From positions 152,044-216,043 of the IMG/VR virus record IMGVR_UViG_3300032236_001859: a DNA stretch of 64,000 nt. One strand, written 5' to 3'. A model generated the notes under the pieces. The model was not told the origin of the DNA. It did not search any database and saw only the letters and a program-made list of their open reading frames with translations. Shown here piece after piece: positions 9,508 to 56,229 of this stretch (position 1 is its first letter; every line of letters begins with the position of its first letter). Made by a program: the position numbers and the translations under genes.

Positions 9508-9535
9508 AGTCTCGACGGGGTTCACTGAGCGTCAA
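9508..9535 (-). promoter_or_regulatory. Promoter TTGACG-N16-GAGACT with internal GTGAAC
   Basis: Overlaps the methyltransferase stop codon, upstream of the 293-aa gene. Confidence 0.45.
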
Positions 9536-10385
9536 GCCCTGCGACATAGGCGTCCAGCTCGGGACCTGAGATATCAGTTTGTAACACACGATCCCAGAGC
9601 ACACGTACTCCATGGAGATTCCGCTGCGCCGCCGGGGTTTCCCCCTCGATGTCGGCATGTGGGATAAGGGAGTCGAGGAGCTCTGGGTTTGTCTCCTGCG
9701 TCGAGACTATCCAGTTGTGATTTCCTGCAGTGTTGGTATCAAAGGGATGCAGCAAGGTGTAATCGGCGAAGAACAGACTGCGAGGTGCGACCCCCGCGGT
9801 GCCGAGATCCTGAAGCAAAGTCTTCATGGGATCAATGTTGGGGCGCCCAATGATGTTGATCCAAATGTTCGGGGTAATCGCTGCGCATGCCTTGAAGAAG
9901 TCGACTTGATCTCCGGTGATCAGTGATTTACCATCATAGGCATCGTGAAGAATAAAGTCGTAGTGGTACCTATCACGTGGGCACCTCGCGATAAGGGGAA
10001 TCAAGGCGAGGGCGTCCGCGGTGAAAACACGGAGCCGGCCGGATTCAATGGCGGCGTTGACCTCAGGGAACCCTTGCTTGCACAGGTGTACCGCGACAGG
10101 ATCGATCTCGATGACGTCGAGGCGAACCCCGGGGAAATTGGCGAGTACCGCGATGGCGCCGGCACCACTACCCAGGCCGACCATGAGCCCCCTGCCATTG
10201 TGGTTCATTACCGCTGCGGCCAGCCATCCCGCGGTGTACGGAGACGCCGAGACCACCCCAGGCCCCCCGTGTTCAGATGGGGGCTCCAGAAATGAGGCGC
10301 CCTGGACCTGCCCATTGATTCGGAGCTGCCGGGCACCATGGACGTCGACGACATCGACGACTCCGAACATGCCCTGAGCCATCAT
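9522..10385 (-). CDS. Spermidine-synthase-like SAM-dependent methyltransferase/aminopropyltransferase
   Basis: VGLGSGAG motif I, DVIEIDP motif II, VFTADA, YDFILHDAYDG; N-terminal LRINGQVQGA as in SpeE-like proteins. Confidence 0.75.
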   Translation of the reverse strand: MMAQGMFGVVDVVDVHGARQLRINGQVQGASFLEPPSEHGGPGVVSASPYTAGWLAAAVMNHNGRGLMVGLGSGAGAIAVLANFPGVRLDVIEIDPVAVHLCKQGFPEVNAAIESGRLRVFTADALALIPLIARCPRDRYHYDFILHDAYDGKSLITGDQVDFFKACAAITPNIWINIIGRPNIDPMKTLLQDLGTAGVAPRSLFFADYTLLHPFDTNTAGNHNWIVSTQETNPELLDSLIPHADIEGETPAAQRNLHGVRVLWDRVLQTDISGPELDAYVAGLDAQ

Positions 10386-11677
10386 GCCGGCTGGAGTTCG
10401 GGATGAGAGTGATCTGCAGGGGCATATCGTATGCGTGGCCCTGCACTGCGTGGTGCGCGTGGAGCCCGCGTAGGCGCTGGTGCTTCGTCTTCGTCAGACA
10501 TCGACTTGTACAACAAATAGCCAAGCCCGAGTACGGCGGCACCCCCCGCGCTGTACTTCAGAATCTTCACGGCCTCTGGGGATGTGACGAAATCAGTTAC
10601 CTTCTTGAAGGATTTGGAAATATCGTCGACCGACTTCGCAGTGTCTTTTACGCCGGAACCCAAGTTGGTTACCGCGTCGGATGCCTTGTCAGCAGAGCTG
10701 GTAACTTTAGACACTGAACTATCGATATTCTTCAAAGTGGACCCAGCGTCCTGAGTCAAACTCTGGACACCTCCGAGGGCACCAGTCAATGCCTTCATCG
10801 CCGGAGTGGTTTCATTGGCAGCATTAGCCACAGCACCCGCGCCCTGTTCAACTGACTTCGCAGCACCAGCAGCGGATTGCCCGACCTCGTCCACATTCTT
10901 ACGAAGAGACTTGACCCCCTCGGAGACATCCTGGCCGACCTGCTTAACTGTGCCAGTAGACGTATTGACTACATCCCGAACACCTTGATCAACTGCCGAA
11001 AGTAGACCTGGCTTTCCATCTTTGTCTTGTAGTTTCTCTTTTGTTGTCCCTGCGATGTCGTTCGCCTTGCCTAGTAAACCGGCACCATAACTTGCAGCCT
11101 CTACGCCTGCGGCAGCAGCACCTAACCCTAGTTTTTGCTTGACGACATCATTTATCCACGTGTCCTGGCGGGCACGTGATGCCAGAGGCGACAAGACTGC
11201 GTGGGCAAGCTCTGGGTCTGCAGAGGAAACAGTTTCAACCCTATTAGTGGTGGGGGAGTGAAAACTGAACTCATGTGCACCTGTCTGTGGGTTTAACTTC
11301 CACAGTGGAGATCTTGATAAATCCATTTTGCCCTCAGCGGCATCTCGGAGATGCCGTTGCGCCAACCCAAAATCCTTACCACTCATCCCATGGCGAGTTG
11401 ACTTGGTAGCCAGGGATCCCCCAAGGATCCCTGCTATTCCGGCTTCACTCCCGGCCCCGATTGGATCCTGCCCCGCAGCAGTAGCGCCTGCGTAGGTTGC
11501 ACCGGCTACAGGTAACCCCACTAACAGCGGCGCCGGGGTCCTCCCCACCAATGCACGTGCACCGGTAAGTGCAGGTGATACCCCTGATGACAGCGCATCC
11601 ATTGCTCCGATGAGCCCCCTGCGATCTGCGGCTACCTTTTTAGTCAGATAAAAAAGCATGATCTGAGCTGGACTCAT
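10382..11677 (-). CDS. Putative virion membrane-associated protein with amphipathic helical repeats
   Basis: 431 aa; KVAA at residue ~13-16; Gly/Ala zippers; ~130-aa 11-mer-like repeat region; C-terminal TM (AGGAAVLGLGYLLY). Confidence 0.6.
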   Translation of the reverse strand: MSPAQIMLFYLTKKVAADRRGLIGAMDALSSGVSPALTGARALVGRTPAPLLVGLPVAGATYAGATAAGQDPIGAGSEAGIAGILGGSLATKSTRHGMSGKDFGLAQRHLRDAAEGKMDLSRSPLWKLNPQTGAHEFSFHSPTTNRVETVSSADPELAHAVLSPLASRARQDTWINDVVKQKLGLGAAAAGVEAASYGAGLLGKANDIAGTTKEKLQDKDGKPGLLSAVDQGVRDVVNTSTGTVKQVGQDVSEGVKSLRKNVDEVGQSAAGAAKSVEQGAGAVANAANETTPAMKALTGALGGVQSLTQDAGSTLKNIDSSVSKVTSSADKASDAVTNLGSGVKDTAKSVDDISKSFKKVTDFVTSPEAVKILKYSAGGAAVLGLGYLLYKSMSDEDEAPAPTRAPRAPRSAGPRIRYAPADHSHPELQPA

Positions 11678-14988: not shown

Positions 14989-15015
14989 ATTATGTCGCCG
15001 TGTTGATATGGGCAA
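14989..15015 (-). promoter_or_regulatory. Promoter TTGCCC-N15-CATAAT
   Basis: Intergenic upstream of 14515-14925. Confidence 0.5.
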
Positions 15016-15625: not shown

Positions 15626-18600
15626 TCATTGTGCAGTCAGGGTGACGTCGTTGCCGTCGCCCCCAACATACGAAATCGTGAAGTTCCGTACAGTGCCTGT
15701 GCTGGCAACGGTGGCTCCTTCGGGGAGCCCGTTGAATACGCCAGTTACTGGTCCCGCGGATTGTCTGTCAATGATCGTGAAGACCTTTCCGACCGCAGGG
15801 GAGTACCCCAACCGAATCGAAAGTGTGGCATTGTTGAGAACAACGCCATCTCCGGTACTCGGGATCACGAGCTGATCATACTGGGTGCCCGCGGCATCCC
15901 CGTTGAGATCCAGGATCACCGTGGCGCCTGAGTTATTCAGATTCAAAGACTTCATGCTGAGTGCTGCAGTGGCCACGGGAGTCCCAGGACTCATGGTCCC
16001 AGAGGTCACGGTGACCACGGAGTTGAGGACCCCGGAACCCCCCAGCGTGGTCCCAGCACCAACATTGAATGCTGCGAAGTCTGGCCTCACGCCTTCATCG
16101 TTGTCATTGTGGTTATACAGTAGAGTGCCCTCGACAAGGCTCCACGTAAATGATCCCCTTGCGGAAGTCCCATCGGTATGCGTGTAATCGGCCTCCGCGA
16201 TGACCAGTGTACCCGCACCAACCTTGATCAGAGTCGTGGCTCCAGTTCTCTTGCGAACCATGGTCAGACAACTCTGACCACCTGAGTCTCCCCATGTCGG
16301 GCAGAAGATGACCTCACGGGTTTCCGTACTCCCCAACACCATGGTATCCCCGGCGTGGCGAACAAACATCTTGAGGACCTGATTGTCGGTGTCTGCATTG
16401 GCGTGGATGTTGATGTCACCACCAAACATTCCTGCCAGGGTTTGTCCCGCTGCGTATTTCGGTGACCCCAGGAGCGTGGCCAAGTTGCTGCCTGATCCGG
16501 CATCGCTGGATGCCCCGAGGACACCACCGATCTGCTTGTTCAATGTGGGGTCCGCGGTACCCAGTGATCCAATGAGGAAACTCTTGCCCTCTGGGATCTG
16601 ATACGTGGTCCCTGCCCCTGAAGTCGCCGTGAGCAGGAACCCAAAATGTGCGGTGTGGTCAACTGTATCCGTGGCACGATGGACTGCGGAGATATACCCG
16701 GGACCCACGGCACCGGGGAGGAAGCTGTTGACTCCTGAGAAACGGATGAACCCAAGGGCGCCTTGCGTGGCTGTACCCACTGGGAGCACTGTGGGGTAGA
16801 CGCCGAAAAGACCAAGGGTCAGACCCCCGTATCCATTGACCAGATTTTGCTTTAGACTGGAAGTCCCATAGTTCGACGCTGCTGTGCCTCCAAAAGGAGC
16901 AGTTGGAATCCCTGACATCGAGTACGTGCCAGATAACACGAGTTCTGTGATCGCGTTATCACCTGTGGCGTAGCCTTGAAATATCACACTACTGCTACCG
17001 ACAAACATGCCTGATAGCGTTGCGCGGGTTCCACCTGATGTACTAAGCCCAGGTCCGAGACTCCAAACCGTGAGACCAAGTGGCCCAAGCAGTGAGAAAT
17101 TATTGGGATACACGGAATCGGAAATCGACGCAGTATCCAGTAAGAGATTTCCCCCCTTACCTCCAGTGACAATGGGGCCGGTCCCCGCGGATGCCCCTTT
17201 TGCCAAGCGAAGATTGATAGCCCCAGCCTGTGCCCCAGACTCCTGTAGGGCGAATCCACCACTCCACGCAGAGTTATCCCCACTAAGAATCAACAGGCTG
17301 TAGTCACCACCTTGACCATAAGAATTGACGTGTCTTATGGAACCTGCTCCACTTATGGTACCAGATAGTTCCACTCTTCCAGTCATATTAACTGGATTAA
17401 CTGCTAAGGGGCCGTGGAGCGTTACGCTGCCCTGTATTACTGCACCGGTTCCCGCAGAGTTGGGTGTTCCGATATACCCCCCTGCAGCACCGACAACGAT
17501 ATTCGTATTGGAATAAATATCCAGTGCATGGCTGAAAAAGAGCACACCTCCCATTAGATAGATTGTGCGGGGGGCAGTGAGACCCCCAAGACTACCACTG
17601 GCGCCTGCCGTCAAGGTTCCAGCAAGAATGTAAATATCCCCTATGGCGTTATTCGCGTTACTTAGGGTAACCGTGTTAGCCAAAAACTTAGTAAATGCGT
17701 AGCCGCCCGTGATCTGTGACGCGATGATAAAACTGTTCTGATGACTCCCCACTATTAGATCCAGTCCGTTGCCTGTTGTAAGTGCTCCGCCCGTGATGGC
17801 TACAACCCCGTTAATCGTACTAGCGATCATGCCACTGGTCACTGTCAAAGTTTTTCCAGTAGCGATTGTTATAGTCCCACTGCCCAGTGTGACTCGAAGA
17901 GAATTGATGGCGACATCATTAGCGATAGTCCCAGTAAGTGTTCCTGCTTTGATGTTTTGGCCTGCGGCCCATAGCGAGCAATCGTTTTGAGACGTGTAGG
18001 CCGGGGGTCCGAAGGTGCCCGATGCCGCGGCGATATAATCACCACCATCAACTCCAGGTACGAAGCCTTGGGTGGCCCCTATCAATAGGGCATTACCTCC
18101 GGCGCCTGAAACACTGCTGCCACCTGCAGTAGTGGGTGCGTTCGTAAAAGAAGGGATAAACCCCGTATTCGTGAATTGGTTGACAACCCCACCAACTGCG
18201 CGAGTGTACCCAGCACCCCCTGCGGTTCCTGTAAATGCCAGATTGACTGATGATGCCTTTATGTTGCTTGAACTAATTGAACTAATCCCGGCCTGGATCG
18301 AAAGACTGTATAGGGTCTGGGAATGCGTGTATGCCCCGGCATCTGGGTAGGGGATGTTGAATGTGCCCCCGCCAGTGGTGCCCCCTAGAATCAGACGCGC
18401 CGATGGATTGATACGATTCGTGACGTTCCTATTGCTCGCCTCGTTATTGGGTATTGTCTCACCACAGTTCAGGGTGCCAGACCCCATGACCGTGATTGGA
18501 AGATTAGCGACTGTTATTCGCCCATAGTTAGCAGCTGTCCCAGGTAACCCTACAGTGGCCCCCAGGTTTATGAGTAGACTGGAAGTCCCTGTTAGGTCTC

Positions 18601-21028
18601 CTTGACTGGCGACACCATTGTTGGTTAAGAATAGGGTGGGGCCAGACACCGAACTGCCCATCAGTGAGTTCGTGGCGACACCTCGAACCACGGTGACCCC
18701 TGAGTAGTCCTGCGAGGCTGCGATGGCGAGAGCCCCAACTGCGGCCATAGCTGAAGTGGGTATCACTGCTCCAGTGGCGACATCTAACGGATTCGCCCCT
18801 GTGAGTGCGTTGACTCCTGAAAGCAACATCGCACCGCCGTTCAGGGAGAAAGGGGGTGCAAACTTGTAACCAACGGTGCTGTTATATGGCGTTATCGACC
18901 CCGCAAAGGTGATAGTGGTATTGTTCGCGGTCGCCATGAATCCAAGACGAACATCCTTATTGAGGCCGGCTGCACTGAGATCAATGTTACCTGTCTTGTT
19001 ATCCAGTGCTAGGATTGATTCAGTCTGTGTCGTGAATCTTGCCAGAACGGCAGCAGTGAATAAAGCATTGCTACCAAACCCGAAAACAATTCCAGCTGGA
19101 ACCGTAATTGGATTTGGGGTAGCCGTGTTCCCACCTGTATTGGAGCCATCTGAGCCCATCGCTGCCAGGGAGTCGAATCGAAAGGCACCCCGACTGGATG
19201 TATCCAGTATGAATCCAGCATCAAATGCGATGTTGGATCCCGCGAGTGCAAAGCGATTAAAATTAGCAGAAACCCCGACACGTAGGACCAGGGGTCCTGC
19301 ACCTCCGACATCCTTGGAGATCGCACCACTGAATATCGTTTCAGAGTTCTGAGATGTATAGCTGCCAAGGGCACCACCTTTGATGCCTATAACAAGTGGA
19401 TCAGTGATTGTAGCAGCACCACTCCGGCTGGCCTGATCGCGGATTCCACCCCCATTGATGAGAACACTGCCGCCTCCAAACATGCGGCCTGAAAGTGCAT
19501 TAGTTAATCCGGTTACCCCGAAAACACCTGAGCTCAGGGTAATCCCGCCTGTGTACCCCGTTGCCGTGTACGCTGCATGGACCTCAGCAGAGGGGGACAT
19601 CGCCACTGTGATGGCCTGTGCGGAGGCCCCTATGGTCCCCAGGTTACCCGCACCCCCACTTGGATACAGTCCGTTGAGCCCCCCATTACCGGATCCCGCG
19701 ATGACAAGATTGGCATTGAGAGTGAGCCCCCCTGTGTACGTGAATGCCCCACCACCGGTCTGATTAAATGCTAGGGTGCGTGGACTCCCATTGATGGAGC
19801 TCAGAGTTGTCGCACTTACGGTGGCGCTTACACCCTGACTACTGCTGCCACCAAACGCCATGGTGCCAGTTAGGGCTGGATACGGGCGCCCAAGTGCCAT
19901 CCCATTACCAGGACTAAAAAATAAGGCACCTGCACTTGGCAGTGACAGACTCGCGACTCCAATGAAATCACCACTTAGAGTGCTTGTTAGACCAGCTAGA
20001 CTGTTGAATGCCCAAGATGCCCCAGTCTGTGCACCGCGAATACCAATGGTCCCGCCCGCATTGATCGTGATACTATTGGTAAGTATTAACGATGGATTGC
20101 TGGCGTTCAGTGATCCCCCGTAATTGACAACATAAGCACCGCTACCCATCGCGGTCTGAGTGTTTGCAGCGAGGTTACCACCAACATTGTTACCCGAGAA
20201 CGTGATACCGTCACCTACGGTAATCGCGCCTGTGTTCGTTGCGGCGTCAACTGTGGAGCCCTGAGTAACGGTTCCGGGGCCACGGTATGTGATCACGTTA
20301 CTACCCCACTGCATCGTGGCATCAAAGGCGACGTTGCTGAGGGCTGTTATGATCACAGGGGCCACAATGGACTGACCGGCTGCGAATGCTAAGGAGCCCG
20401 CCGGGGAGATGTCACCAAGGGTGCATGAGCCTTCAATGCGAATTGTTGCCGTGAATGTACGACCGTTGTTATCCCCCATGCTGAGGCGGCCATTCTTAAT
20501 AGTGATAACCCCTGTACCAAATGAATTAGCATTCGTGGAGAACACCCAAGCAGTGTTCCCATCGATGATGAGTCCTCCGCTACCAACACTGGAGGCACTT
20601 GTGATCGACCATGGCCCCGATTTTACGGTGAGAGTGTTTGTAAAGCGTAGTGCGGTACCCATGGAAACCGCGCCTGCTGTGCTGTTGTCCCACTGTGCCC
20701 CTGGCGCGATTTGTAGATTACCTGATGCAAAGGTGAGTGTGCCATTGCGTACCAATAGATTACGGACTGTCTGGAGGCCATTCACGGTTACCGTATAGGA
20801 TCCAGTTGCATTGCTCCCCGCAGCGAACACGGCATCACTTCCCTGGATCCATGCCCGTGTGGCCAGGAGACCCGCGGGATCCGTGGTCCAATAACTATTG
20901 GTCCCCCATGTCCCCGTCGCAGTCGTCGAGTTCGTGGCGCCGACACTGGTACCATTGGCATCCCAATACAGCGTAATCGGTGCGTACCTGTAGGAGGGGT
21001 AACAGATATTACCGGAGCCGATTGACAT
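15626..21028 (-). CDS. 1800-aa autotransporter-passenger-like beta-helix adhesin / tail spike
   Basis: G/T/S/N-rich beta-helix repeats; YWDANGT..GTW start; passenger-associated repeats (LIKVGAGTLVI, GTTLGGSG); C-terminal DQL...FTIID...GVFNGLPEG...ISYVGGDGNDVTL typical of PVC-bacterial surface proteins; no signal peptide or beta-barrel seen. Confidence 0.75.
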   Translation of the reverse strand: MSIGSGNICYPSYRYAPITLYWDANGTSVGATNSTTATGTWGTNSYWTTDPAGLLATRAWIQGSDAVFAAGSNATGSYTVTVNGLQTVRNLLVRNGTLTFASGNLQIAPGAQWDNSTAGAVSMGTALRFTNTLTVKSGPWSITSASSVGSGGLIIDGNTAWVFSTNANSFGTGVITIKNGRLSMGDNNGRTFTATIRIEGSCTLGDISPAGSLAFAAGQSIVAPVIITALSNVAFDATMQWGSNVITYRGPGTVTQGSTVDAATNTGAITVGDGITFSGNNVGGNLAANTQTAMGSGAYVVNYGGSLNASNPSLILTNSITINAGGTIGIRGAQTGASWAFNSLAGLTSTLSGDFIGVASLSLPSAGALFFSPGNGMALGRPYPALTGTMAFGGSSSQGVSATVSATTLSSINGSPRTLAFNQTGGGAFTYTGGLTLNANLVIAGSGNGGLNGLYPSGGAGNLGTIGASAQAITVAMSPSAEVHAAYTATGYTGGITLSSGVFGVTGLTNALSGRMFGGGSVLINGGGIRDQASRSGAATITDPLVIGIKGGALGSYTSQNSETIFSGAISKDVGGAGPLVLRVGVSANFNRFALAGSNIAFDAGFILDTSSRGAFRFDSLAAMGSDGSNTGGNTATPNPITVPAGIVFGFGSNALFTAAVLARFTTQTESILALDNKTGNIDLSAAGLNKDVRLGFMATANNTTITFAGSITPYNSTVGYKFAPPFSLNGGAMLLSGVNALTGANPLDVATGAVIPTSAMAAVGALAIAASQDYSGVTVVRGVATNSLMGSSVSGPTLFLTNNGVASQGDLTGTSSLLINLGATVGLPGTAANYGRITVANLPITVMGSGTLNCGETIPNNEASNRNVTNRINPSARLILGGTTGGGTFNIPYPDAGAYTHSQTLYSLSIQAGISSISSSNIKASSVNLAFTGTAGGAGYTRAVGGVVNQFTNTGFIPSFTNAPTTAGGSSVSGAGGNALLIGATQGFVPGVDGGDYIAAASGTFGPPAYTSQNDCSLWAAGQNIKAGTLTGTIANDVAINSLRVTLGSGTITIATGKTLTVTSGMIASTINGVVAITGGALTTGNGLDLIVGSHQNSFIIASQITGGYAFTKFLANTVTLSNANNAIGDIYILAGTLTAGASGSLGGLTAPRTIYLMGGVLFFSHALDIYSNTNIVVGAAGGYIGTPNSAGTGAVIQGSVTLHGPLAVNPVNMTGRVELSGTISGAGSIRHVNSYGQGGDYSLLILSGDNSAWSGGFALQESGAQAGAINLRLAKGASAGTGPIVTGGKGGNLLLDTASISDSVYPNNFSLLGPLGLTVWSLGPGLSTSGGTRATLSGMFVGSSSVIFQGYATGDNAITELVLSGTYSMSGIPTAPFGGTAASNYGTSSLKQNLVNGYGGLTLGLFGVYPTVLPVGTATQGALGFIRFSGVNSFLPGAVGPGYISAVHRATDTVDHTAHFGFLLTATSGAGTTYQIPEGKSFLIGSLGTADPTLNKQIGGVLGASSDAGSGSNLATLLGSPKYAAGQTLAGMFGGDINIHANADTDNQVLKMFVRHAGDTMVLGSTETREVIFCPTWGDSGGQSCLTMVRKRTGATTLIKVGAGTLVIAEADYTHTDGTSARGSFTWSLVEGTLLYNHNDNDEGVRPDFAAFNVGAGTTLGGSGVLNSVVTVTSGTMSPGTPVATAALSMKSLNLNNSGATVILDLNGDAAGTQYDQLVIPSTGDGVVLNNATLSIRLGYSPAVGKVFTIIDRQSAGPVTGVFNGLPEGATVASTGTVRNFTISYVGGDGNDVTLTAQ

Positions 21029-25254: not shown

Positions 25255-25309
25255 GTGCGCAGCGTAAGGCTTCAAGTCGACGAGGAAAGCCTATGCCCGC
25301 GCCCTGAAC

Positions 25310-25327
25310 AGTCTCGACGTCGAGACT
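25310..25327. repeat. Perfect 18-bp palindrome AGTCTCGACGTCGAGACT
   Basis: Read directly; abuts the XRE gene stop codon. Confidence 0.85.
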
Positions 25328-25571
25328 ATCCGGGGTCTTCAACTGAAATCGCTGACAGGGGATCCGGAGACAGGGCCTCCATCGACCATCCCGTGAGCCC
25401 CGACATCTTACGCAGTAAATCGATCGTGGGGGTCCGACGACTCGACTCGATGAGGCTGAGGTAGGAATCACTGACCCCAAGAGCGGCGGCCATGCGGTCC
25501 TGGGCCAGACCACATTCGAGGCGGGCCTGCTTCCAGGCCTCTCCGAGATTACGGGGCTGTGGCTTGTTCAT
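25326..25571 (-). CDS. XRE-family helix-turn-helix regulator
   Basis: LGEAWKQARLECGLAQDRMAAALGVSDSYLSLIESSRRTPTIDLLRKMS is a canonical HTH_3 pattern. Confidence 0.9.
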   Translation of the reverse strand: MNKPQPRNLGEAWKQARLECGLAQDRMAAALGVSDSYLSLIESSRRTPTIDLLRKMSGLTGWSMEALSPDPLSAISVEDPG

Positions 25572-26347: not shown

Positions 26348-26367
26348 TGCATGCCCTCATGGCGTAC

Positions 26368-26394
26368 AGCCTATGAGGGTTGACTCTCTGTAAA
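26368..26394 (-). promoter_or_regulatory. Promoter TTTACA-N15-TAGGCT with internal GTCAAC
   Basis: Intergenic, upstream of the 259-aa/XRE operon. Confidence 0.55.
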
Positions 26395-30606: not shown

Positions 30607-30638
30607 GTAGTCGTTGGTTTTTGTGTCACAGGGGTTAC

Positions 30639-30665
30639 ATCCTGTGGGGGTTTACTCTCAGTCAA
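30639..30665 (-). promoter_or_regulatory. Short-spacer promoter TTGACT-N15-CAGGAT with internal GTAAAC, upstream of nrdJ
   Basis: Read from sequence; same architecture at about ten intergenic sites. Confidence 0.6.
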
Positions 30666-31202: not shown

Positions 31203-31229
31203 ATTCTGGCAGGGCTTCCCGGGGTGCAA
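31203..31229 (-). promoter_or_regulatory. Promoter TTGCAC-N15-CAGAAT
   Basis: Intergenic between the two 64-aa genes. Confidence 0.55.
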
Positions 31230-35459: not shown

Positions 35460-35486
35460 AGCTTATGACCCCCTGGGCTTCAGCAA
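35460..35486 (-). promoter_or_regulatory. Promoter TTGCTG-N15-TAAGCT
   Basis: Intergenic upstream of 34810-35436. Confidence 0.45.
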
Positions 35487-40799: not shown

Positions 40800-40867
40800 A
40801 TAGTCTCCTCTGGGCGTTAGCCCATGTGGGTGGGTTGACTCACAGTAAACCATGACTCTCAGCGGTG

Positions 40868-41131
40868 TCAAGTCGGATGGGTGTCTGGGATGTCAGCGAT
40901 GGAGGCCTGAGTCCGCGTGATACCGCCAGTGGCCACAACAAACAAGTTCTGGACATATTCAGTGGATGCGCGCTCCTTGAACTCCTGTGGGGTGATCCCT
41001 GAGGTCAACGCGATCTGCAAGATGGTGCTTCGCAATGCAGCGGCGGCCTGAAGCAGCTCAGTCGAGTTGTTGATCACGTTCTGAATCTCTACGGGGAGCT
41101 TGGGTGCCGCGGGTAGTGGTGTGTAATCCAT
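40868..41131 (-). CDS. Small hypothetical protein
   Basis: Start re-called at MDYTPL after an AAGGA RBS. Confidence 0.5.
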   Translation of the reverse strand: MDYTPLPAAPKLPVEIQNVINNSTELLQAAAALRSTILQIALTSGITPQEFKERASTEYVQNLFVVATGGITRTQASIADIPDTHPT

Positions 41132-42881: not shown

Positions 42882-43723
42882 ACCAGACCTCCGACGCCGT
42901 AGTCGACCACAGCAAAGTTGATCTCTCCTCGTGGCGCCGTGGTATCGATGCCGACACCGTGCCAGATCTCAGTGGTGACCTCGAAGGTGCCCTTGTCACC
43001 CAAGGTGATCCGTGGCCACACCGCATCAGCGATGACGACGTGGTGGCCACAGGAGGCCCCACGAAGAATGCAGGTCTTATGTGGCAACGCGGAGGCCTTG
43101 GGAGCCCCGACGACAACCCTGACGCCGGCTTCACGTGCCAGTAAAGGATTCGCGGACAGCCGGGCCTTCACGGCAGCGCTGATCATCCAGGCCTCGGGGT
43201 ACACGATGAGATCACATGCCGACTTCATCACCGAGGTGACTTGCTCACCAGGCTTACTCGCATCGAGGAGCGTGGCGCGGGAGATCACGGATTCGAGGAC
43301 CCCGAGCACCCTGGTGTCCACTGCGAAGGCCAGGGGGGTCAAGCACTCCCGGGTGTACCAGTCCCAGAACGATTCCCCCGTTTTCAGGAGATCAGCGATC
43401 GATGACTTCGCGGTCACCGGGGTACGCAGGATCGCAAACTTTACATCTCCCTTTACACCTGGCTCGACAACATTGGCGACCAAGACATCCTTGGGGTTCG
43501 CACTGAAGTGGGCCCTAGCAGCGTCGACATTGGCTGCGGGGGCCTCGAGGGCGACCCCGAAGACCTCGGCGAGGCTGCGACGACTCGGCGGCCACCACTT
43601 CATCGTGGTCGCCACGTTCTCCAACCACTCCAGGGTCCACACCCCAAGGATGGCATTGAAGGCCACGGGATCCGAGTTCACGGAGTCGAGAAGACCAGCG
43701 GGGGCACCAGTGAATGGGGTCAT
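42878..43723 (-). CDS. Divergent HK97-fold major-capsid-like protein (putative)
   Basis: Spine-helix-like VTAKSSIADLLKTGESFWDWYTRECLTPLAFAVDTRVLGVL and C-terminal EIWHGVGI...PRG resemble large-phage major capsid proteins from memory. Confidence 0.5.
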   Translation of the reverse strand: MTPFTGAPAGLLDSVNSDPVAFNAILGVWTLEWLENVATTMKWWPPSRRSLAEVFGVALEAPAANVDAARAHFSANPKDVLVANVVEPGVKGDVKFAILRTPVTAKSSIADLLKTGESFWDWYTRECLTPLAFAVDTRVLGVLESVISRATLLDASKPGEQVTSVMKSACDLIVYPEAWMISAAVKARLSANPLLAREAGVRVVVGAPKASALPHKTCILRGASCGHHVVIADAVWPRITLGDKGTFEVTTEIWHGVGIDTTAPRGEINFAVVDYGVGGLV

Positions 43724-45087
43724 GCGTTCCTCGTCAAACGGAGGCCATGGAAGACGTCAGCGAAATCGATGACGCAGGTGTAACTCAGGGTGACCTCGAG
43801 GATCCCAGACTTCGCCAGCTTGGTCTTCTCAGCCTTGGCAGCCTTGAGTTCTTTTTCCTCGGCGCATGCCTTGAGCACGGCTTCATCGAGTTCCCGTGCC
43901 TTGGCGTCATGTGCCCTGGTGACCTCCTCGGCGAACTCGGGGAGCACGGGTTCCCGTGGGGCCTTCAGGTAATCCTCGAGGGCCTGCTTGGCTGCAGCCA
44001 CAGCTATCACTGCGGTGCCATGTGCCCTCGCGGCTTCATCGGCGGCAATCCTGCCGATGTCCTTGAGACGGATGCCATAGGCCCAATGGTCTTCCTTGAA
44101 GACGCCCCCAGGCTTCTTGAACACTGCGATACCATGCGGAAGTGGCGTAGGATCCTCAACGGCGACCTGGGCTGCCTTCAGGGATTCAATGATCTCCCCG
44201 TTGGCGAGCCCAATGGCCGCGTACATCTTGGAGTCAATGAGCACGGATTCATTGTCTTGAGTCATCGCGACGAGGACGTCATCTGCTGGCTTCACGGCAT
44301 CCTTGAAGGCAATGTGGCCATCCAATGCGATGTCGAGGTAATCCGCTATACCCCTGCAGAGATGGGTAGCAAACCAGTGCCGGAATGTGACACCTTGCTC
44401 CGCGATCTCGCCGAGGTCGACGACAGCCTTGACCACGAAGATCTTAGCGTTGCCTGATGTTTCAGCGATGCCCTCGTGACCATCAATAAAATCGTGTCGT
44501 AACTTAGAAAGTTCTGTAAGAATCTCCTCTTGGATCTCTGGTTTCCAGATACGTTGGAGGCAGGAGTTCTCAAGCATCCACCATGCCGCGAACTCTCTGC
44601 AGGTCTTGAACCCCATGAGGGCGTCTTCGAGAACACTGGCGTAGAATGCAGCATTGAGCTCCCGTGCCCTCTCGGGGCCAGGACTCGCGAGTTCTACTGG
44701 GGGCACATATCGTGGGGGCGCCGAGAGCGAGTCGATGTGGGCACCAATAGCCTTCCAATCCGGTTTGGCCACGATGCCATCGAGCTCGGGATCCTTGACG
44801 TAATCCACTGTGTTAAAGGAGATATGACCATTCGCATTCCGCTTTATCAGGATCTTGCCTGCACTGGCGCGTGCCGCTGCAATGGCCTGCCTGAGTTCCA
44901 TGGTCATCGGGAGACCATCGGGTAGCGAGGCGGGGTCAACGATCTGACCTTTATCGATGACGTGGAGCCCTTTGGCCGCGATATGATTCTGCCGCCACTG
45001 CCCCAGGATCTCATTCCGTTTGTGAGCAAACGAGGACCCTAAATTGATCTCGAATCCGCCTGAGACCATGTCGCCTTCACGCAGCAT
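43720..45087 (-). CDS. Hypothetical protein, paralog of the downstream capsid-like gene
   Basis: Ungapped 37-aa similarity to 42878-43723; C-terminal coiled coil; promoter-like motif upstream. Confidence 0.55.
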   Translation of the reverse strand: MLREGDMVSGGFEINLGSSFAHKRNEILGQWRQNHIAAKGLHVIDKGQIVDPASLPDGLPMTMELRQAIAAARASAGKILIKRNANGHISFNTVDYVKDPELDGIVAKPDWKAIGAHIDSLSAPPRYVPPVELASPGPERARELNAAFYASVLEDALMGFKTCREFAAWWMLENSCLQRIWKPEIQEEILTELSKLRHDFIDGHEGIAETSGNAKIFVVKAVVDLGEIAEQGVTFRHWFATHLCRGIADYLDIALDGHIAFKDAVKPADDVLVAMTQDNESVLIDSKMYAAIGLANGEIIESLKAAQVAVEDPTPLPHGIAVFKKPGGVFKEDHWAYGIRLKDIGRIAADEAARAHGTAVIAVAAAKQALEDYLKAPREPVLPEFAEEVTRAHDAKARELDEAVLKACAEEKELKAAKAEKTKLAKSGILEVTLSYTCVIDFADVFHGLRLTRNA

Positions 45088-45114: not shown

Positions 45115-45142
45115 ACTGTGACCAGGGTTTACTGTGCGTCAA
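45115..45142 (-). promoter_or_regulatory. Promoter TTGACG-N16-CACAGT with internal GTAAAC
   Basis: Intergenic, upstream of the capsid-like paralog pair. Confidence 0.55.
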
Positions 45143-45154: not shown

Positions 45155-45736
45155 TCAGCCTTCTTCGCTGTCGTCTTCCTCGGACTTATCACTCCCCATT
45201 GTCTTGTATAACAAGGCAGCGAGTAGGGCAGCGGCGCCGCCACCAAGGGCAATCTTGTCCCAGGGGAGGCCTTGGTCTGGCTTCGGCTTCCCGAGAACCC
45301 CGGAAGCCCCGGATAACGCGAGATCACGGACACCACGATAGGGGGCACCAGCCCAGGACTTGGCGTCGGGATCCTTGGGATCCCCTGATAACGCATCGGC
45401 GGTGGCCTGGGTGGCCTTGAGTGCTGGTGTCGCCGCGACACCAGCTGCGGTGCCGATGAGTGCATTCTTGGTCGCCGTGGTCTCTTTCGCAGGCGGGCTC
45501 ACCGGTGGTTTGGTGACTTGCCGGTTGGCATGCCAGCGCTTCGCTGCACTACCCAGGTTCAGGGCACCTTGGGTGCCCAGGGCAGTCATCGCCGCTGAAT
45601 TGGCTTCATCGTTGGAGGCCCCGCCGATTTGGTTGGCGGTGTAGGCGATACCCGCGGGAGCCACGGTACGCAGCGCGGTGTTACCCGTGCGCTGCAGGTC
45701 GGCTTGATTCCACCACTTCTTCACTGGGTTTTGCAT
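45155..45736 (-). CDS. Ala/Gly-rich protein with C-terminal TM and acidic tail
   Basis: AGGAG RBS before MQNPVKKWW; IALGGGAAALLAALLYK-acidic end resembles the C-terminus of 10382-11677. Confidence 0.55.
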   Translation of the reverse strand: MQNPVKKWWNQADLQRTGNTALRTVAPAGIAYTANQIGGASNDEANSAAMTALGTQGALNLGSAAKRWHANRQVTKPPVSPPAKETTATKNALIGTAAGVAATPALKATQATADALSGDPKDPDAKSWAGAPYRGVRDLALSGASGVLGKPKPDQGLPWDKIALGGGAAALLAALLYKTMGSDKSEEDDSEEG

Positions 45737-46370
45737 GCCGTGTTCTCCTGCTCCTGAGTCGACGACCATCTGGTCTGTAGAATCTCAGGATATGGTAGAC
45801 ACGCGCCGAGGATAGCCCCGAGGCCTGGGCGACCTTCCTGAGGCTCTTGAGATCCACGTAGAGGGTGTGGACCACCTTGATGTCATCGGCTTCACCGGGG
45901 AGCAGCGCCGGCCTCTTCAGCCCGAACTTCCGGGCGACATAGAAGATCGTTGAGGGTGCCTTGCCCAACTTATCAGCGATGTCCGACAAACGGTCTCCAG
46001 CGTCGAGACGTTCTTGGATCCACTTCAGGATGCCGGGGTCCATGGCACGCTTGGTGAACGCGTACTTGGCATGATACCCTGGGCCATGTTTGTAGTAGGC
46101 TGCACGAACACTGGTGAGCTTGTGCGCTGTTCTCACCGAGATGAGCTCGAGGTTCTGAGTCTTCGCGAACTCCGCAGCCCAGTCCTCTGGGGACATCGGC
46201 TGGGGTCTCGGCCGCTTCGGCTTCATAGGCTTCGATCTCTTGAGCTCACCAGGCAGGGGGCCTGGCTTCGAGAGATCGATGAAACCCTGGGGGAGCCCGG
46301 GGGCAGTGGTCACCGGGGCGTACAGGACCTTGTTGCCCTGTGGGCTCGGCTTACTGAGATCAATGGGCAT
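45681..46370 (-). CDS. DNA-binding protein with two HTH motifs
   Basis: RLSDIADKLGKAPSTIFYVARKFGL and SLRKVAQASGLSSARVYHIL. Confidence 0.65.
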   Translation of the reverse strand: MPIDLSKPSPQGNKVLYAPVTTAPGLPQGFIDLSKPGPLPGELKRSKPMKPKRPRPQPMSPEDWAAEFAKTQNLELISVRTAHKLTSVRAAYYKHGPGYHAKYAFTKRAMDPGILKWIQERLDAGDRLSDIADKLGKAPSTIFYVARKFGLKRPALLPGEADDIKVVHTLYVDLKSLRKVAQASGLSSARVYHILRFYRPDGRRLRSRRTRHAKPSEEVVESSRPAAHG

Positions 46371-46371: not shown

Positions 46372-46668
46372 TCACCACTTCCCCAGGGGGCACTTGGATT
46401 CAGGGGGTGCTGTGATCTTGGAGACAAACCCATTTGCCTTGGCGCAGCGGCGGGCACGCACTGGGGCGGCAACCGGTGAGGATTCCACGCAGTCCGAACA
46501 TTTGGCGAGGCGGATCAAGATGGTGCCCTGATCGGAGTGACCAGGCCTGGGCGGCACCGGTGCCTGGGGCTGCGGTGCCGCCACCGAGCTCACCGCGATG
46601 ACAGCCTTGGTGATTGGACCGGGGCTAGATGTGCTCTGACCCCAAGGGGGCGGTGTTGTCGCTGGCAT
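46372..46668 (-). CDS. Small Cys-containing protein (RL..CxxC...C...CPLGKW)
   Basis: C-terminal KCPLGKW motif common in phage small Zn-binding proteins. Confidence 0.45.
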   Translation of the reverse strand: MPATTPPPWGQSTSSPGPITKAVIAVSSVAAPQPQAPVPPRPGHSDQGTILIRLAKCSDCVESSPVAAPVRARRCAKANGFVSKITAPPESKCPLGKW

Positions 46669-47002
46669 TGGATTGACCTCTGAGTGGGAGTTGAATCTTC
46701 TGAGCATGTACCTGGGCTGGGTCTGGCTTCAGTCCCTGTGCTAGGGCGGCACCAAATGCCTCATCCAGGGTTGGTAATGGTTTTGATTTCACAGCATTCT
46801 CAGATGCCTTCTCGAGATGCCGGGCGTAGTCCTCGGTGACCTCGATGGCCTTGAGCATGGGATACGTCGCACTGAGATCTCGACCAGCCTTGATGCCGTC
46901 CCCAATGGCCTGCCTGGCCAGGATCAGGAGCATCTGGAACTCCTTGTAGGTCGGAGCACGTGGCGTGGGCATATTGAGGATAGCGGGAGGAGGTGGGATC
47001 AT
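46625..47002 (-). CDS. Hypothetical protein, probably leaderless
   Basis: 125 aa; ATG 7 nt after a -10-like CATCCT; no RBS. Confidence 0.55.
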   Translation of the reverse strand: MIPPPPAILNMPTPRAPTYKEFQMLLILARQAIGDGIKAGRDLSATYPMLKAIEVTEDYARHLEKASENAVKSKPLPTLDEAFGAALAQGLKPDPAQVHAQKIQLPLRGQSNASDNTAPLGSEHI

Positions 47003-47009: not shown

Positions 47010-47036
47010 AGGATGTCAGGGTTTACTGGGGGTCAA
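47010..47036 (-). promoter_or_regulatory. Short-spacer promoter TTGACC-N15-CATCCT with internal GTAAAC
   Basis: ATG 7 nt downstream. Confidence 0.6.
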
Positions 47037-54848: not shown

Positions 54849-55137
54849 CGGGATCCCACTGTCTCGACGCTGGAGACTGTTGATGAGTTGAAGGCCTCAG
54901 AGGGGTCACCGTCTTGGGATCCCCCTTGGGCTCGGGGACATAGGCCTTGTGATGCCCCGAGGATATGATGAGTTTTCCGCTCTTGGTCCGCGCATCGTGC
55001 ACTGTAACCTGCGCTGGTAAAGGTTCGCCTACCCAGTCGTCGAAGAGCCAGTTGAAAGCCTTGGTGTCCTCTAACCCCAACTTGATCGGGGGAGGCAACG
55101 GGGTCTTGCGCTTGCGGACCACGTACCGTATCGCCAT
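54799..55137 (-). CDS. Hypothetical protein, probably leaderless
   Basis: MAIRYVV start 7 nt after a -10-like CATAGT; frame choice uncertain versus 54845-55261. Confidence 0.4.
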   Translation of the reverse strand: MAIRYVVRKRKTPLPPPIKLGLEDTKAFNWLFDDWVGEPLPAQVTVHDARTKSGKLIISSGHHKAYVPEPKGDPKTVTPLRPSTHQQSPASRQWDPDDLLTEDDDDSALDPR

Positions 55138-55144: not shown

Positions 55145-55171
55145 ACTATGGCTGCACGGGAGCACCAACAA
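55145..55171 (-). promoter_or_regulatory. Promoter TTGTTG-N15-CATAGT
   Basis: ATG 7 nt downstream. Confidence 0.4.
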
Positions 55172-55257: not shown

Positions 55258-56073
55258 TCACGATTTAGTCTCCACGGGGAGGAAGGTATCGGGCTTGGAG
55301 CCCGGGATCACCTTGGAGTAATCCACTGGGGAATGCCCGGCTTCCTTGCTCCCCCATGCCGCCTTCACCGTCCAGGTATCCGTGGCGACATCGTACTGGA
55401 TCGCAGAGAACACAGCCTTCTTCGCGTACTCCCGGATCGTGCGACCATCAGGACGCCACTTAAAGCTCATCCCTGGGTTATCCTTGAGGTAGGCGCGCTC
55501 CATGGCCACGATGTCCAGGGTACACACGGGGACTCCCATGCGCACCAAGTGCTTGTAGATCACGAGTTCCCTGAACCGGAACTCGGTAAACGTGCGAGGA
55601 GAACTTCGACCTGGAGTCGTATGCACCCTGGCTTCCTCGACCATGAGATGCTTCATGGCCTCCCGCTTCTTGAGACGGTGGACATGGAGGCGCTTCCCTG
55701 GGATGACGTCCACACAGGGGATCTCGACGTGACGGAGGTTGGTATCAATGTTCTCATATCTCTCATAGGTCAGGATAACGCCGACACCACGGAGCCCAGC
55801 GAGATCCTTGACGGCGACATGAGTCCATCCCCTCTTGGGGAAGGCGACATAGACGAGATCATAGACACCCATGCGGACATGCTTCTCGGCCTGGGCGAGT
55901 ACGCCGAGATTCGCGGTGGCCTTGACCTCGATACCGATGAGATCCCCCTGAGGGTTCACCGCGGTGATATCACAGAGCCCACCGAGCTCGGGGTACACGG
56001 TCCAACCCTGGGCGACGAGCTCCCGGGAAACTGTAACAGCGACGCGTTCCTCAGGTGGTATCTTGGTGATCAT
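55258..56073 (-). CDS. PD-(D/E)xK nuclease-family protein
   Basis: YPE...CDITAV...IGIEVKAT..LAQAE..YDLVYVAFP..GVGVI. Confidence 0.75.
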   Translation of the reverse strand: MITKIPPEERVAVTVSRELVAQGWTVYPELGGLCDITAVNPQGDLIGIEVKATANLGVLAQAEKHVRMGVYDLVYVAFPKRGWTHVAVKDLAGLRGVGVILTYERYENIDTNLRHVEIPCVDVIPGKRLHVHRLKKREAMKHLMVEEARVHTTPGRSSPRTFTEFRFRELVIYKHLVRMGVPVCTLDIVAMERAYLKDNPGMSFKWRPDGRTIREYAKKAVFSAIQYDVATDTWTVKAAWGSKEAGHSPVDYSKVIPGSKPDTFLPVETKS

Positions 56074-56202
56074 GTCATCTCTTTCGATTCAAGATTCGTA
56101 GGTCTGTGTGACCCCACTCCAAATAGGGGGTCTTCCGCGTTGTCAGAAATCACTGTAAAACATATAGGAATACACCCGATCCATAAAATCATTTTGGCGA
56201 GT

Positions 56203-56229
56203 ATTATGCTGTGGTTTACTCAGAGTAAT
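56203..56229 (-). promoter_or_regulatory. Promoter ATTACT-N15-CATAAT with internal GTAAAC
   Basis: Immediately after the terminator, upstream of the nuclease gene. Confidence 0.5.

What the first reader, a model, noticed from the sequence alone, without database searches (positions are those of the whole stretch)
9508..56229. Genome-wide promoter class with a 15-16 bp spacer and an embedded palindrome TTKAC-N5-GTMAA
Seen: eight intergenic minus-strand sites have a TTG/TTT/ATT-type hexamer exactly 15 bp from a (C/T)A-n3-T hexamer (14989, 26368, 30639, 31203, 35460, 47010, 55145, 56203), and two have 16 bp (9508, 45115). A weaker one is at ~40813-40851. Several contain the imperfect inverted repeat (C/G)TT(G/T)AC-N5-GT(A/C/G)AAC overlapping the -35. 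Established: sigma70 prefers 17+/-1 bp, and MerR-type activators remodel non-optimal spacers. Inference: a phage- or host-lineage-specific sigma, or a dimeric activator/repressor, reads these sites.
Basis: partly seen in the sequence, partly recalled or inferred. Interest (0 to 1): 0.7.

Follow-up and report, generated by a model that had tools for sequence, protein, structure and literature searches.

The report
Jumbo-phage promoters with an embedded operator
An uncultured 216-kb phage drives about a dozen of its non-structural operons from unusually short-spaced bacterial-type promoters that share a 16-base near-palindrome, most likely the docking site of one phage regulator that switches the whole set together.

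Summary
All eleven listed sites sit at the stated coordinates on the coding (minus) strand.

The core element is gaC-TTGAC-N4-AGT(A/C/G)AAC-cc. It occurs 7 times in the window against 0.01 expected, and at 12 strong sites in the whole 216-kb phage genome. Eleven of the 12 are non-coding. Ten of the 12 have an xAxxxT hexamer 15 or 16 bp after the TTGAC hexamer. It is the top de novo motif of all upstream regions. In relatives its flanks and its central bases drift while the element itself is kept.

I read these sites as sigma70-type promoters with a short spacer of 15-16 bp. The transcription start is predicted about 7 nt after the -10, and some genes appear leaderless. A lineage-specific operator is laid over the -35 and spacer. 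At two or three sites the same dyad instead overlaps a -10/+1, which fits a DNA-binding regulator better than a sigma.

The candidate readers are the genome's only XRE protein and a tandem-HTH protein. Neither was tested for binding.

The phage also encodes a bacterial-type RNA polymerase and a sigma. The sigma's DNA-reading helix is conserved in relatives that lack the motif.

No transcript data were listed, so start sites and the reader of the motif remain inferred.

The parts
30639..30665 (-). Best example of the class. It reads TTGACT, then a 15-bp spacer, then CAGGAT. The dyad TTGACTGAGAGTAAAC lies at 30650-30665. It sits upstream of the intein-bearing ribonucleotide reductase gene (27184-30606).
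   Evidence: It has the highest PWM score in the genome, 32.3. In four relatives the motif and the -10 are invariant while the centre changes from GAG to GAC.
47010..47036 (-). Dyad promoter reading TTGACC-15-CATCCT. Seven nt later comes the ATG of the 125-aa gene (46625-47002), so the mRNA is predicted to be leaderless.
   Evidence: In four relatives conservation starts abruptly at CTTGAC. The -10, the 7-nt gap and the ATG are all kept, and a 3-nt indel follows the ATG.
45115..45142 (-). Dyad promoter reading TTGACG-16-CACAGT, upstream of the 455-aa gene (43720-45087).
   Evidence: It is fully conserved in relatives.
26368..26394 (-). Dyad promoter reading TTTACA-15-TAGGCT. Its half-sites are swapped (TTTAC...GTCAA). 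It heads the operon that contains the XRE gene.
   Evidence: The motif and TAGGCT are kept in G002.
9508..9535 (-). Dyad promoter reading TTGACG-16-GAGACT. It overlaps the 3' end of the upstream gene. It heads the long operon that runs into the phage RNA polymerase genes.
   Evidence: In G002 the hexamer is TAGCCT at the same spacing. The orthologous gene in G003 is preceded by TTGCGA-17-TACGAT with no dyad.
40834..40871 (-). Composite site. An upstream TTGACA (40866-40871) is followed by an 18-bp spacer and then TACTGT. That TACTGT lies inside the left half of the dyad TTTACTGTGAGTCAAC (40834-40849). The dyad is therefore in a -10/+1 register here.
   Evidence: TTGACACC, the dyad and the constant 18-bp distance are all conserved in four relatives, while the 8 nt between them vary.
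56203..56248 (-). Two overlapping promoter readings. P1 is TTGCAT-15-TACTCT (56222-56248). P2 is ATTACT-15-CATAAT (56203-56229). The dyad ATTACTCTGAGTAAAC (56214-56229) overlaps the -10 of P1.
   Evidence: In G002, P1 and the dyad are conserved but the P2 -10 is not.
55145..55171 (-). Promoter without a dyad, reading TTGTTG-15-CATAGT. Seven nt later comes an ATG at 55137, so this is a leaderless candidate.
35460..35486 (-). Promoter without a dyad, reading TTGCTG-15-TAAGCT.
   Evidence: It resembles the TTGCGG-16-TAAGCT promoters of relatives G003 and G004.
31203..31229 (-). Promoter reading GACTTGCAC-15-CAGAAT. It has the upstream GAC flank of the class, but only a partial right half (GGAAGCC).
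14989..15015 (-). Promoter without a dyad, reading TTGCCC-15-CATAAT.
25261..25288 (-). It reads TTTCCT-16-TACGCT, and 6 nt later comes the ATG at 25254 (leaderless candidate).
8576..8603 (-). It reads TTGTCC-16-TACGCT and lies 33 nt before the start at 8542.
25326..25571 (-). XRE-family HTH protein of 81 aa, a candidate reader of the dyad. It is the only HTH_3 gene in the genome.
   Evidence: Pfam HTH_3, E 4.7e-11. It is the only hit in 216 kb. It is SinR-like in the PDB. It is present at 88-90% identity in G001 and G002, which carry the motif, and absent from eight relatives that lack it.
45681..46370 (-). Tandem-HTH protein of 229 aa, a second candidate reader. A bipartite monomer would fit the asymmetry of the motif.
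   Evidence: It gives weak HTH_38/HTH_23 hits (aa 118-145) and a weak HTH_28 hit (aa 170-210). Only close homologues exist. It is present in G002 and absent from motif-less relatives. The atlas look-alikes are leads only.

Best explanation
The sites are promoters of the bacterial sigma70 type. They have a -35-like hexamer (TTGACn or TTGnnn) and a weak -10 (YAnnnT, with only A at position 2 and T at position 6 kept). The spacer is 15-16 bp instead of 17 bp. Transcription is predicted to start at a purine about 7 nt after the -10, which gives short leaders or leaderless mRNAs.

On twelve of these promoters, seven of them in the window, a lineage-specific 16-bp element is laid over the promoter. 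The element is TT(G/T)ACT-N3-AGT(A/C/G)AAC. It consists of two inverted half-sites one helical turn apart. In most sites the left half is the -35 itself. In two or three sites it is the -10 of an upstream promoter.

I infer that one phage-encoded DNA-binding protein docks on this element and so controls the whole set of non-structural operons together. Occluding the -35/spacer or the -10/+1 would make it a shut-off repressor, which I think most likely. The candidates are the XRE dimer and the tandem-HTH protein.

What is shown: the motif, its position, its strand, its spacing, its conservation and its distribution. What is inferred: the transcription starts, which polymerase or sigma initiates, which protein binds, and the sign of the regulation.
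For: Promoter identity.
- Sense-strand, upstream-only enrichment, with a spacer peak at 15-16 bp.
- 10 of 12 dyad sites have xAxxxT at 15 or 16 bp (p 2e-9), and 11 of 12 are non-coding (p 4e-13).
- Three or four sites put the -10 exactly 6-7 nt before an ATG with no Shine-Dalgarno sequence. The same leaderless layout, TTGCGG-16-TAAGCT-7-ATG, occurs in relatives G003 and G004.
- In relatives, conservation begins sharply at the -35 and covers the -10 with no indels in the spacer.

The dyad as a separate protein site.
- It is the top de novo motif of all upstream regions.
- The half-sites are conserved while the central 3-4 nt vary, both between sites and between relatives.
- At 40834-40871 and 56214-56248 the conserved dyad overlaps the -10/+1 of an upstream TTGxxx promoter instead of forming the -35.
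- The promoter at the position orthologous to 9508-9535 in G003 is TTGCGA-17-TACGAT, with no dyad.
- The motif is present only in close relatives, as are the XRE and tandem-HTH genes.

Regulon. All 12 sites lie in the non-structural arc (p 5e-5).
Against: - No transcript 5' ends and no binding data exist.
- The motif is only partly symmetric, and its flanks (GAC on the 5' side, CC on the 3' side) are directional. A plain homodimer does not need that.
- The co-occurrence of XRE and tandem-HTH with the motif is shared by about 170 other lineage-specific genes, so it is weak evidence.
- The -10 hexamers are poor, and the 15-bp spacer is unfavourable for known primary sigmas. An activator or a special holoenzyme may therefore be needed rather than a repressor.
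- The host is unknown, so its normal promoter spacing could not be compared.
Confidence: 0.5

Rival explanations
1. The whole 20-bp block, together with the -10-like hexamer, is one composite promoter. It is read by a dedicated holoenzyme: either the phage's own beta-beta' RNA polymerase with the phage sigma, or host polymerase re-targeted by a phage factor. In this reading AGTAAAC is a specificity element, in the way the MotA box works in T4 middle promoters. The short spacer would then reflect the geometry of that holoenzyme.
For: - The phage encodes a bacterial-type polymerase and a sigma70-family protein.
- The register between the motif and the -10 is fixed in 10 of 12 sites.
- The flanks are directional.
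- The -10 is weak and the 15-bp spacer is non-canonical. Canonical 16-18-bp sigma70 promoters are not enriched.
Against: - The sigma's region-4.2 helix (AVSQR..RIQ) is invariant in G000, G003 and G004, yet G003 and G004 lack the motif. They use TTGCGn-16/17-TAnnnT promoters instead.
- The polymerase genes lie downstream of a dyad promoter. That creates a start-up problem unless the enzyme is packaged in the virion.
- The dyad occurs in a second register, over a -10, at two or three conserved sites.
- Promoters without the dyad share the same short spacer.
Confidence: 0.22
2. The dyad binds an activator. A dimer centred near -27 compensates for the bad spacer and the weak -10, which would make these middle-class promoters that fire only after an early phage protein has been made.
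For: The -10 hexamers are poor and the spacer is short. The element is fixed in position relative to the -10 in most sites.
Against: - The known spacer-bound activators (MerR family) act on over-long 19-20-bp spacers (my own knowledge), and no MerR gene was found.
- At 40834-40871 and 56214-56248 the dyad covers a -10/+1, which is a repressor position.
- Promoters without the dyad have the same spacing and similar -10 quality.
Confidence: 0.15
3. The motif is the core promoter itself, ending at about +1, in the style of the contiguous promoters of single-subunit phage polymerases. Transcripts would then start right after AAACC and carry a 5' hairpin.
For: The conserved block is contiguous and about 20 bp long. 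Strong inverted repeats start just after AAC at 26394 and 30665, and their 3' arms are conserved in relatives.
Against: - No T7-like polymerase domain appeared in the large proteins that were scanned. The genome-wide search had a silent control, however.
- Inverted repeats over the -10 are not more frequent than in random windows.
- This reading leaves the fixed-distance xAxxxT hexamers (p 2e-9) and the leaderless ATG geometry unexplained.
- The start would fall on C rather than on a purine.
Confidence: 0.08
4. The repeats are copies of a mobile promoter cassette, spread by recombination as with the promoter-stem-loop cassettes of T4-type phages. There is no dedicated binding protein.
For: The same roughly 20-bp block heads many unrelated, lineage-specific genes.
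Against: Only specific positions are conserved. The centre and the flanks differ between copies. Every copy is kept in relatives that differ by 10-25% around it. That is position-wise selection, not recent copying.
Confidence: 0.05

Closest known systems
Operators and 'stoperators' of cluster A mycobacteriophages (L5, Bxb1, TipsytheTRex)
   Same: In both cases a short sequence is repeated many times across a phage genome. It lies in promoters and in short intergenic spaces, and its orientation follows the direction of transcription. In L5 the sites are read by a phage repressor, a monomer with two DNA-binding domains (PMC9283540). The tandem-HTH protein here could play that part.
   Different: The L5 sites are 13-mers without dyad symmetry, and there are more than 20 of them. 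Many act on elongation away from promoters, and they belong to temperate phages. Here the element is a near-palindrome of 16 bp with 12 strong copies, almost always on a promoter. No integrase was found. The proteins show no detected similarity.
Lambdoid operators (Cro/CI) and other XRE-family operator sites overlapping -35 or -10
   Same: Both have inverted half-sites one helical turn apart. The sites overlap core promoter hexamers, and a small HTH_3 protein is encoded nearby.
   Different: Lambdoid operators are clustered at two control regions. Here single sites are spread over about 95 kb, one per operon, in a probably lytic jumbo phage.
MerR-type promoters
   Same: Both have a dyad lying between or over the -35 and the spacer of a promoter with non-optimal spacing.
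   Different: MerR promoters have 19-20-bp spacers, and the activator shortens them (my own knowledge). Here the spacer is 15-16 bp, and no MerR gene is present.
T4 middle promoters (MotA box plus sigma70 -10)
   Same: Both have a phage-specific element upstream of a sigma70-type -10, at a distance shorter than a normal -35. Both define a temporal class.
   Different: The MotA box replaces the -35 and is not a dyad. Here a good TTGAC is kept. MotA and AsiA homologues were not searched for.
Multisubunit RNA polymerases of phiKZ/AR9-type jumbo phages
   Same: Both are jumbo phages with their own beta/beta'-like polymerase.
   Different: Those enzymes are very divergent and split into several subunits. 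Those phages have no sigma, and their promoters are short AT-rich motifs at the start site (PMC7824862; PMC5449584, listed). Here the polymerase matches bacterial models strongly, a sigma70-family gene is present, and the promoters look like -35/-10 promoters.

Membership tests
sigma70-type (-35/-10) promoter | A -35 hexamer resembling TTGACA on the transcribed strand, upstream of a gene | tested here: met
   TTGAC is present in 9 of 12 dyad sites; the others read TTTAC (2) and ATTAC (1). The sites without a dyad read TTGnnn. Enrichment is on the sense strand and in upstream regions only.
sigma70-type (-35/-10) promoter | A -10 hexamer with A at position 2 and T at position 6 | tested here: met
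   10 of 12 dyad sites have it at 15 or 16 bp, p 2e-9. The hexamers are kept in relatives.
sigma70-type (-35/-10) promoter | A spacer of 17 +/- 1 bp | tested here: not met
   Dyad sites have spacers of 15 bp (6 sites), 16 bp (4) and 17 bp (1). Over all upstream sites the counts are 15, 9 and 5 for 15, 16 and 17 bp. A canonical 16-18-bp scan gives 6 hits against 8.3 expected.
sigma70-type (-35/-10) promoter | A transcription start 5-9 nt downstream of the -10 | not testable with these tools
   No RNA run was listed. There is indirect support only: an ATG lies 6-7 nt after the -10 at 47010, 55145 and 25261.
MerR-type activated promoter | An over-long spacer of 19-20 bp | tested here: not met
   The spacers are 15-16 bp.
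MerR-type activated promoter | A MerR-family regulator is encoded | tested here: not met
   PF13411 gave no match in the 216-kb genome, and the control genomes responded. A host MerR cannot be excluded.
Operator of a dimeric HTH regulator | Inverted half-sites about 10 bp apart centre to centre, with a free central segment | tested here: met
   The element is TT(G/T)AC-N5-GT(A/C/G)AA. The centre varies between sites and between relatives, while the halves are kept.
Operator of a dimeric HTH regulator | The same site is used in different registers relative to promoter hexamers | tested here: met
   It lies over the -35 in about 10 sites. It lies over a -10/+1 at 40834-40871 and 56214-56248, and before terL at genome position 63404.
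Operator of a dimeric HTH regulator | A cognate protein binds it | not testable with these tools
   Complex prediction did not fold the protein-DNA job. Only co-occurrence of XRE and tandem-HTH with the motif is available.
Cluster A mycobacteriophage stoperators | Asymmetric sites, many per genome, oriented with transcription | tested here: inconclusive
   Orientation follows transcription in 11 of 12 sites and the flanks are asymmetric. But the core is a dyad, and nearly all copies lie on promoters.
Cluster A mycobacteriophage stoperators | A temperate phage with an immunity repressor | tested here: not met
   No tyrosine integrase was found. The genome looks like that of a lytic jumbo phage with its own polymerase.
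Contiguous promoter of a single-subunit phage polymerase | A T7-like polymerase gene is present | tested here: inconclusive
   PF00940 was not found, but the control genomes were silent too. Pfam and PHROG scans of the large window proteins showed none.

The most novel reading that the evidence does not exclude
The short-spacer promoters, with or without the dyad, are read by a phage-built holoenzyme made of the fused beta-beta' polymerase and the minimal 214-aa sigma. Its -35 to -10 geometry would be 1-2 bp tighter than that of any characterised primary sigma. The dyad-binding protein would then time the hand-over between host and phage transcription. This would be the first phage known to carry a complete bacterial-style promoter-recognition system of its own.
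Probability: 0.15. Interest if true: 0.8.

Novelty: new variant of a known kind. Interest (0 to 1): 0.45.

Why it matters
The finding gives a sequence-level map of how an uncultured jumbo phage organises its early and middle transcription. There are about a dozen operons, each with the same promoter-plus-operator module, and the module can be lifted directly into reporter and binding assays.

The consistent 15-16-bp spacer is unusual for -35/-10 promoters. The phage also encodes a bacterial-type polymerase and a sigma. Together these raise a testable question: whether a phage can bring its own promoter geometry.

If the dyad is simply a repressor site on host-type promoters, the case is a tidy but ordinary example of phage gene control.

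Tried and rejected
1. An exact-pattern scan of viral contigs for CTTGAC-N4-AGTAAACC returned scattered single chance hits and was uninformative.
2. MerR analogy: no MerR gene was found, and the spacer is wrong in the opposite direction.
3. ECF-type reading, with GTAAAC as the -35 and CGCC as the -10. It was rejected because the implied starts fall inside Shine-Dalgarno sequences or after start codons at genome position 3520 and at window 26394 and 47036 (reasoned from the sequences). The CGCC is also not conserved in relatives.
4. RNA or DNA hairpin reading of the dyad. It was rejected because the halves are never fully complementary: they read TTGAC with GTAAA, or TTTAC with GTCAA.
5. Inverted repeats over the -10 as a class feature are not above chance.
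6. Host inference failed. There is no WhiB. Homologues of a glycosyltransferase are only phage relatives. No close cultured phage exists.
7. Transcript evidence: no RNA run was listed.
8. A protein-DNA complex prediction for the XRE dimer on the 30642-30671 site was not folded by the tool. It is not evidence either way.
9. A shared 'late' promoter motif for the phage sigma was looked for and none was convincing.
10. Rfam gave no hit in the window.


Full report
**Context**

The window is bases 152,044-216,043 of a 216,043-bp IMG/VR virus record with direct terminal repeats. My own codon-usage gene caller finds 233 genes, 220 of them on the minus strand, and 94% of the record is coding. The DNA occurs in soil, wetland and lake metagenomes. 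No close cultured phage exists, and the host is unknown.

The genome has two parts.
- A non-structural arc runs from about 161 kb through the record's ends to about 40 kb. It holds the ribonucleotide reductase with an intein, a RecD/PIF1-like helicase, glycosyltransferases and many small genes of unknown function.
- The rest holds the DNA polymerase and replication helicases (40-50 kb), terminase (63-65 kb), baseplate, collagen-like tail fibres, head protease and RNA polymerase genes.

The strongest signal is the embedded element.
- TTKAC-N4-AGTNAAC has 7 exact matches in the window against 0.01 expected.
- A matrix built from the sites finds 12 strong sites in the whole genome. The fuller consensus is gaC-TTGAC-N4-AGT(A/C/G)AAC-cc, worth about 22 bits.
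- 11 of the 12 are non-coding, although only 6% of the genome is non-coding (p 4e-13).
- 10 of the 12 have a hexamer with A at position 2 and T at position 6 at 15 bp (6 sites) or 16 bp (4 sites) after the first hexamer (p 2e-9).
- GACTTGAC (7 of 7 copies) and AGTAAACC (6 of 6 copies) are the most upstream-enriched words in the genome.
- A de novo expectation-maximisation search of all 72 upstream regions returns only pieces of this motif.

The loose pattern TTG-N18-YANNNT is not enriched in the window as a whole. In sense-strand upstream zones, however, the spacer histogram peaks at 15 bp (15 sites) and 16 bp (9 sites). It gives 5 sites at 17 bp, and the antisense strand is flat. A canonical 16-18-bp sigma70 scan finds nothing above chance.

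I add two more sites without a dyad, at 25261-25288 and 8576-8603.

**Why these are promoters**

The elements are directional. The C before TTGAC, the CC after AAC and the -10-like hexamer are all on the coding strand in 11 of 12 sites.

At 47010, 55145 and 25261 the second hexamer ends 6-7 nt before an ATG that has no Shine-Dalgarno sequence. This is the geometry of a leaderless mRNA starting at the A of the ATG. The same layout, TTGCGG-16-TAAGCT-7-ATG, is found in two distant relatives. At the other sites the predicted start leaves a 13-17-nt leader that contains the Shine-Dalgarno sequence (sequences).

Phylogenetic footprints agree. Four relatives differ by 10-25% around these sites. In them, conservation at 47036 begins abruptly at CTTGAC. 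It then runs through the -10 hexamer and the ATG with no indel in the spacer, while everything upstream is scrambled. At 30665 and 45142 the motif and the -10 are invariant.

**Why the dyad looks like a separate protein site**

- The halves TT(G/T)AC and GT(A/C/G)AA are one helical turn apart. The 3-5 central bases vary freely, both between sites and between relatives (GAG to GAC at 30665, GAG to GGG at 26394, GTG to GTC at 40849).
- The halves are never perfectly complementary, so a hairpin is unlikely.
- At 40834-40871 a conserved TTGACA lies a constant 18 bp upstream of TACTGT, which is part of the dyad's left half.
- At 56214-56248 a conserved TTGCAT lies 15 bp upstream of TACTCT, again inside the left half. 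The alternative downstream -10 at that site is not conserved in the relative.
- A third copy sits directly before the plus-strand terminase gene, with TACCAT in its left half.
- The same element therefore appears over a -35 in most sites and over a -10/+1 in a few. That is how an operator behaves, not a sigma-specific promoter element.
- In G003 the gene orthologous to the one served by 9508-9535 has a plain TTGCGA-17-TACGAT promoter without a dyad. The dyad is thus an overlay on an older promoter type.

**Distribution among relatives**

Nineteen related loci, most on contigs of 100-200 kb, share the polymerase.
- The motif is present only in the closest relatives: G001 and G002 at 95-97% polymerase identity, and two contigs whose glycosyltransferase is 80-89% identical.
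- It is absent from relatives at 36-54% polymerase identity.
- G004 instead has about 25 copies of a different palindrome, aGTGTTC(A/G)CGCGAACACt. These are mostly intergenic and lie 15-40 nt before start codons.
- G003 has no dominant dyad.
- In G003 the spacer peak is at 16-17 bp. In G004 it is at 17 bp, with a secondary peak at 15 bp. The preference for short spacers is therefore strongest in this lineage.

**Who reads the sites**

The phage encodes a bacterial-type RNA polymerase.
- Beta is fused to the N-terminal half of beta' in a 1951-aa protein that contains a LAGLIDADG intein.
- The C-terminal half of beta' is a separate 634-aa protein.
- A 214-aa sigma70-family protein is also present. 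Apart from a few marginal hits (E > 0.2), a three-sequence profile of it hits only sigma factors in the PDB, with RpoS best at E 1.6e-5, covering regions 2.3 to 4.2.

This sigma is a core gene of the family, at 42-46% identity. Its region-4.2 helix, AVSQR..RIQ, is invariant in G000, G003 and G004, although the motif is not shared. It also lacks the arginine and glutamate that primary sigmas use on TTGACA (compared with E. coli sigma70 from my own knowledge). So the phage sigma is unlikely to read the lineage-specific part.

The polymerase genes lie at the far end of an operon headed by the 9508-9535 and 8576-8603 promoters. This favours host polymerase for at least the first round, unless the phage enzyme is packaged in the virion.

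The genome has a single HTH_3 (XRE) gene, at 25326-25571, in an operon headed by a dyad promoter. It has no MerR gene and no integrase. A tandem-HTH protein at 45681-46370 lies between two dyad promoters. Both proteins are present in relatives that carry the motif and absent from those that do not. However, about 170 other genes share that pattern. No binding test was possible.

**Mechanism I commit to**

These are short-spacer -35/-10 promoters, probably started by the host primary-sigma holoenzyme. They fire in the non-structural arc. One phage protein binds the dyad and occludes either the -35 and spacer or the -10 and +1, so that about a dozen operons are shut off (or, less likely, switched on) together. 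The protein is either the XRE dimer or the tandem-HTH protein acting as a bipartite monomer. My confidence is about 0.5. The rivals are a dedicated holoenzyme (0.22), an activator (0.15), a contiguous promoter ending at +1 (0.08) and a passive mobile cassette (0.05).

**Comparison with known systems**

The nearest analogues are the operators and stoperators of cluster A mycobacteriophages, which are many oriented copies read by a two-domain monomer (PMC9283540), and lambdoid or XRE operators that overlap promoter hexamers.

The MerR comparison fails on both features that were tested.

Against the phiKZ/AR9 type of jumbo phage, this phage differs in three ways. Its polymerase is clearly bacterial-like, it has a sigma, and its promoters are of the -35/-10 type. 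A survey of cultured jumbo phages reports polymerase-bearing groups without sigma and sigma-bearing groups without polymerase (PMC7824862).

**Limits**

Gene starts come from my own simple caller. Transcription starts, the initiating enzyme, the binding protein and the sign of control are all inferred. The host, and therefore its normal spacer length, is unknown.

Noticed in passing
L156:5031-10886 (-), L156:137-2041 (-) and L157:4546-5190 (-). These correspond to genome positions 145031-150886, 140137-142041 and 88546-89190, just left of the window.: The phage encodes a bacterial-type RNA polymerase. Beta is fused to the N-terminal half of beta' (1951 aa, with an intein), and the C-terminal half of beta' is a separate 634-aa protein. 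It also encodes a minimal 214-aa sigma70-family protein. All three are core genes of a family of 160-200-kb metagenomic phages. A survey of cultured jumbo phages describes polymerase and sigma as occurring in separate groups. This combination may deserve its own study.
   Followed up: partly
Window 54860-54878, 40248-40266, 25310-25327 and 9690-9708, plus about 12 more copies in the genome.: A second repeat family is present: the 18-19-bp near-palindrome AGTCTC-GACGCTG-GAGACT. It occurs in both orientations. Half of the copies are inside genes and half are intergenic. It is not part of the promoter motif, and its function is unknown.
   Followed up: partly
Window 27184-30606, at aa 531-611 of the product. 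The same feature occurs at L156:5031-10886, at aa ~573-1010.: Both the ribonucleotide reductase and the polymerase beta subunit carry LAGLIDADG inteins.
   Followed up: no
Window 780-6455 and 15626-21028.: Two giant minus-strand ORFs, of 1891 and 1800 aa, have no Pfam, PHROG or NCBIfam match at all.
   Followed up: no
Relative G004 (loci L168-L176), for example G004 positions 94555, 124983 and 130352.: About 25 copies of a different, perfect palindrome are present: aGTGTTC(A/G)CGCGAACACt. They are mostly intergenic and lie 15-40 nt before start codons. Its flank forms TAGTGT, a -10-like hexamer. It may be a lineage-specific counterpart of the dyad studied here.
   Followed up: partly
Window 26347-26378 and 30617-30645.: Strong inverted repeats are present: CCCTCAT...ATGAGGG and CACAGG...CCTGTG. 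Their 5' arms overlap the predicted -10, and their 3' arms are conserved in relatives while the loops change. As a class feature such repeats are not above chance. These two remain unexplained.
   Followed up: partly
Genome positions 109480-110547 and 115239-118502 (loci L195 and L196).: Large 'intergenic' gaps next to the collagen-like tail-fibre genes are full of Gly-X-Y-type repeats. They are probably coding sequence that my gene caller missed.
   Followed up: no
Relative G003, positions 127100-127800 (locus L164).: A tRNA-rich array is present, with a repeated GTTACTTC word about every 70-130 bp. No tRNA gene was found in the window.
   Followed up: no
Genome positions 63404-63421 (locus L193).: A copy of the dyad abuts the ATG of the plus-strand large terminase gene. 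This is one of the few genes on that strand.
   Followed up: partly
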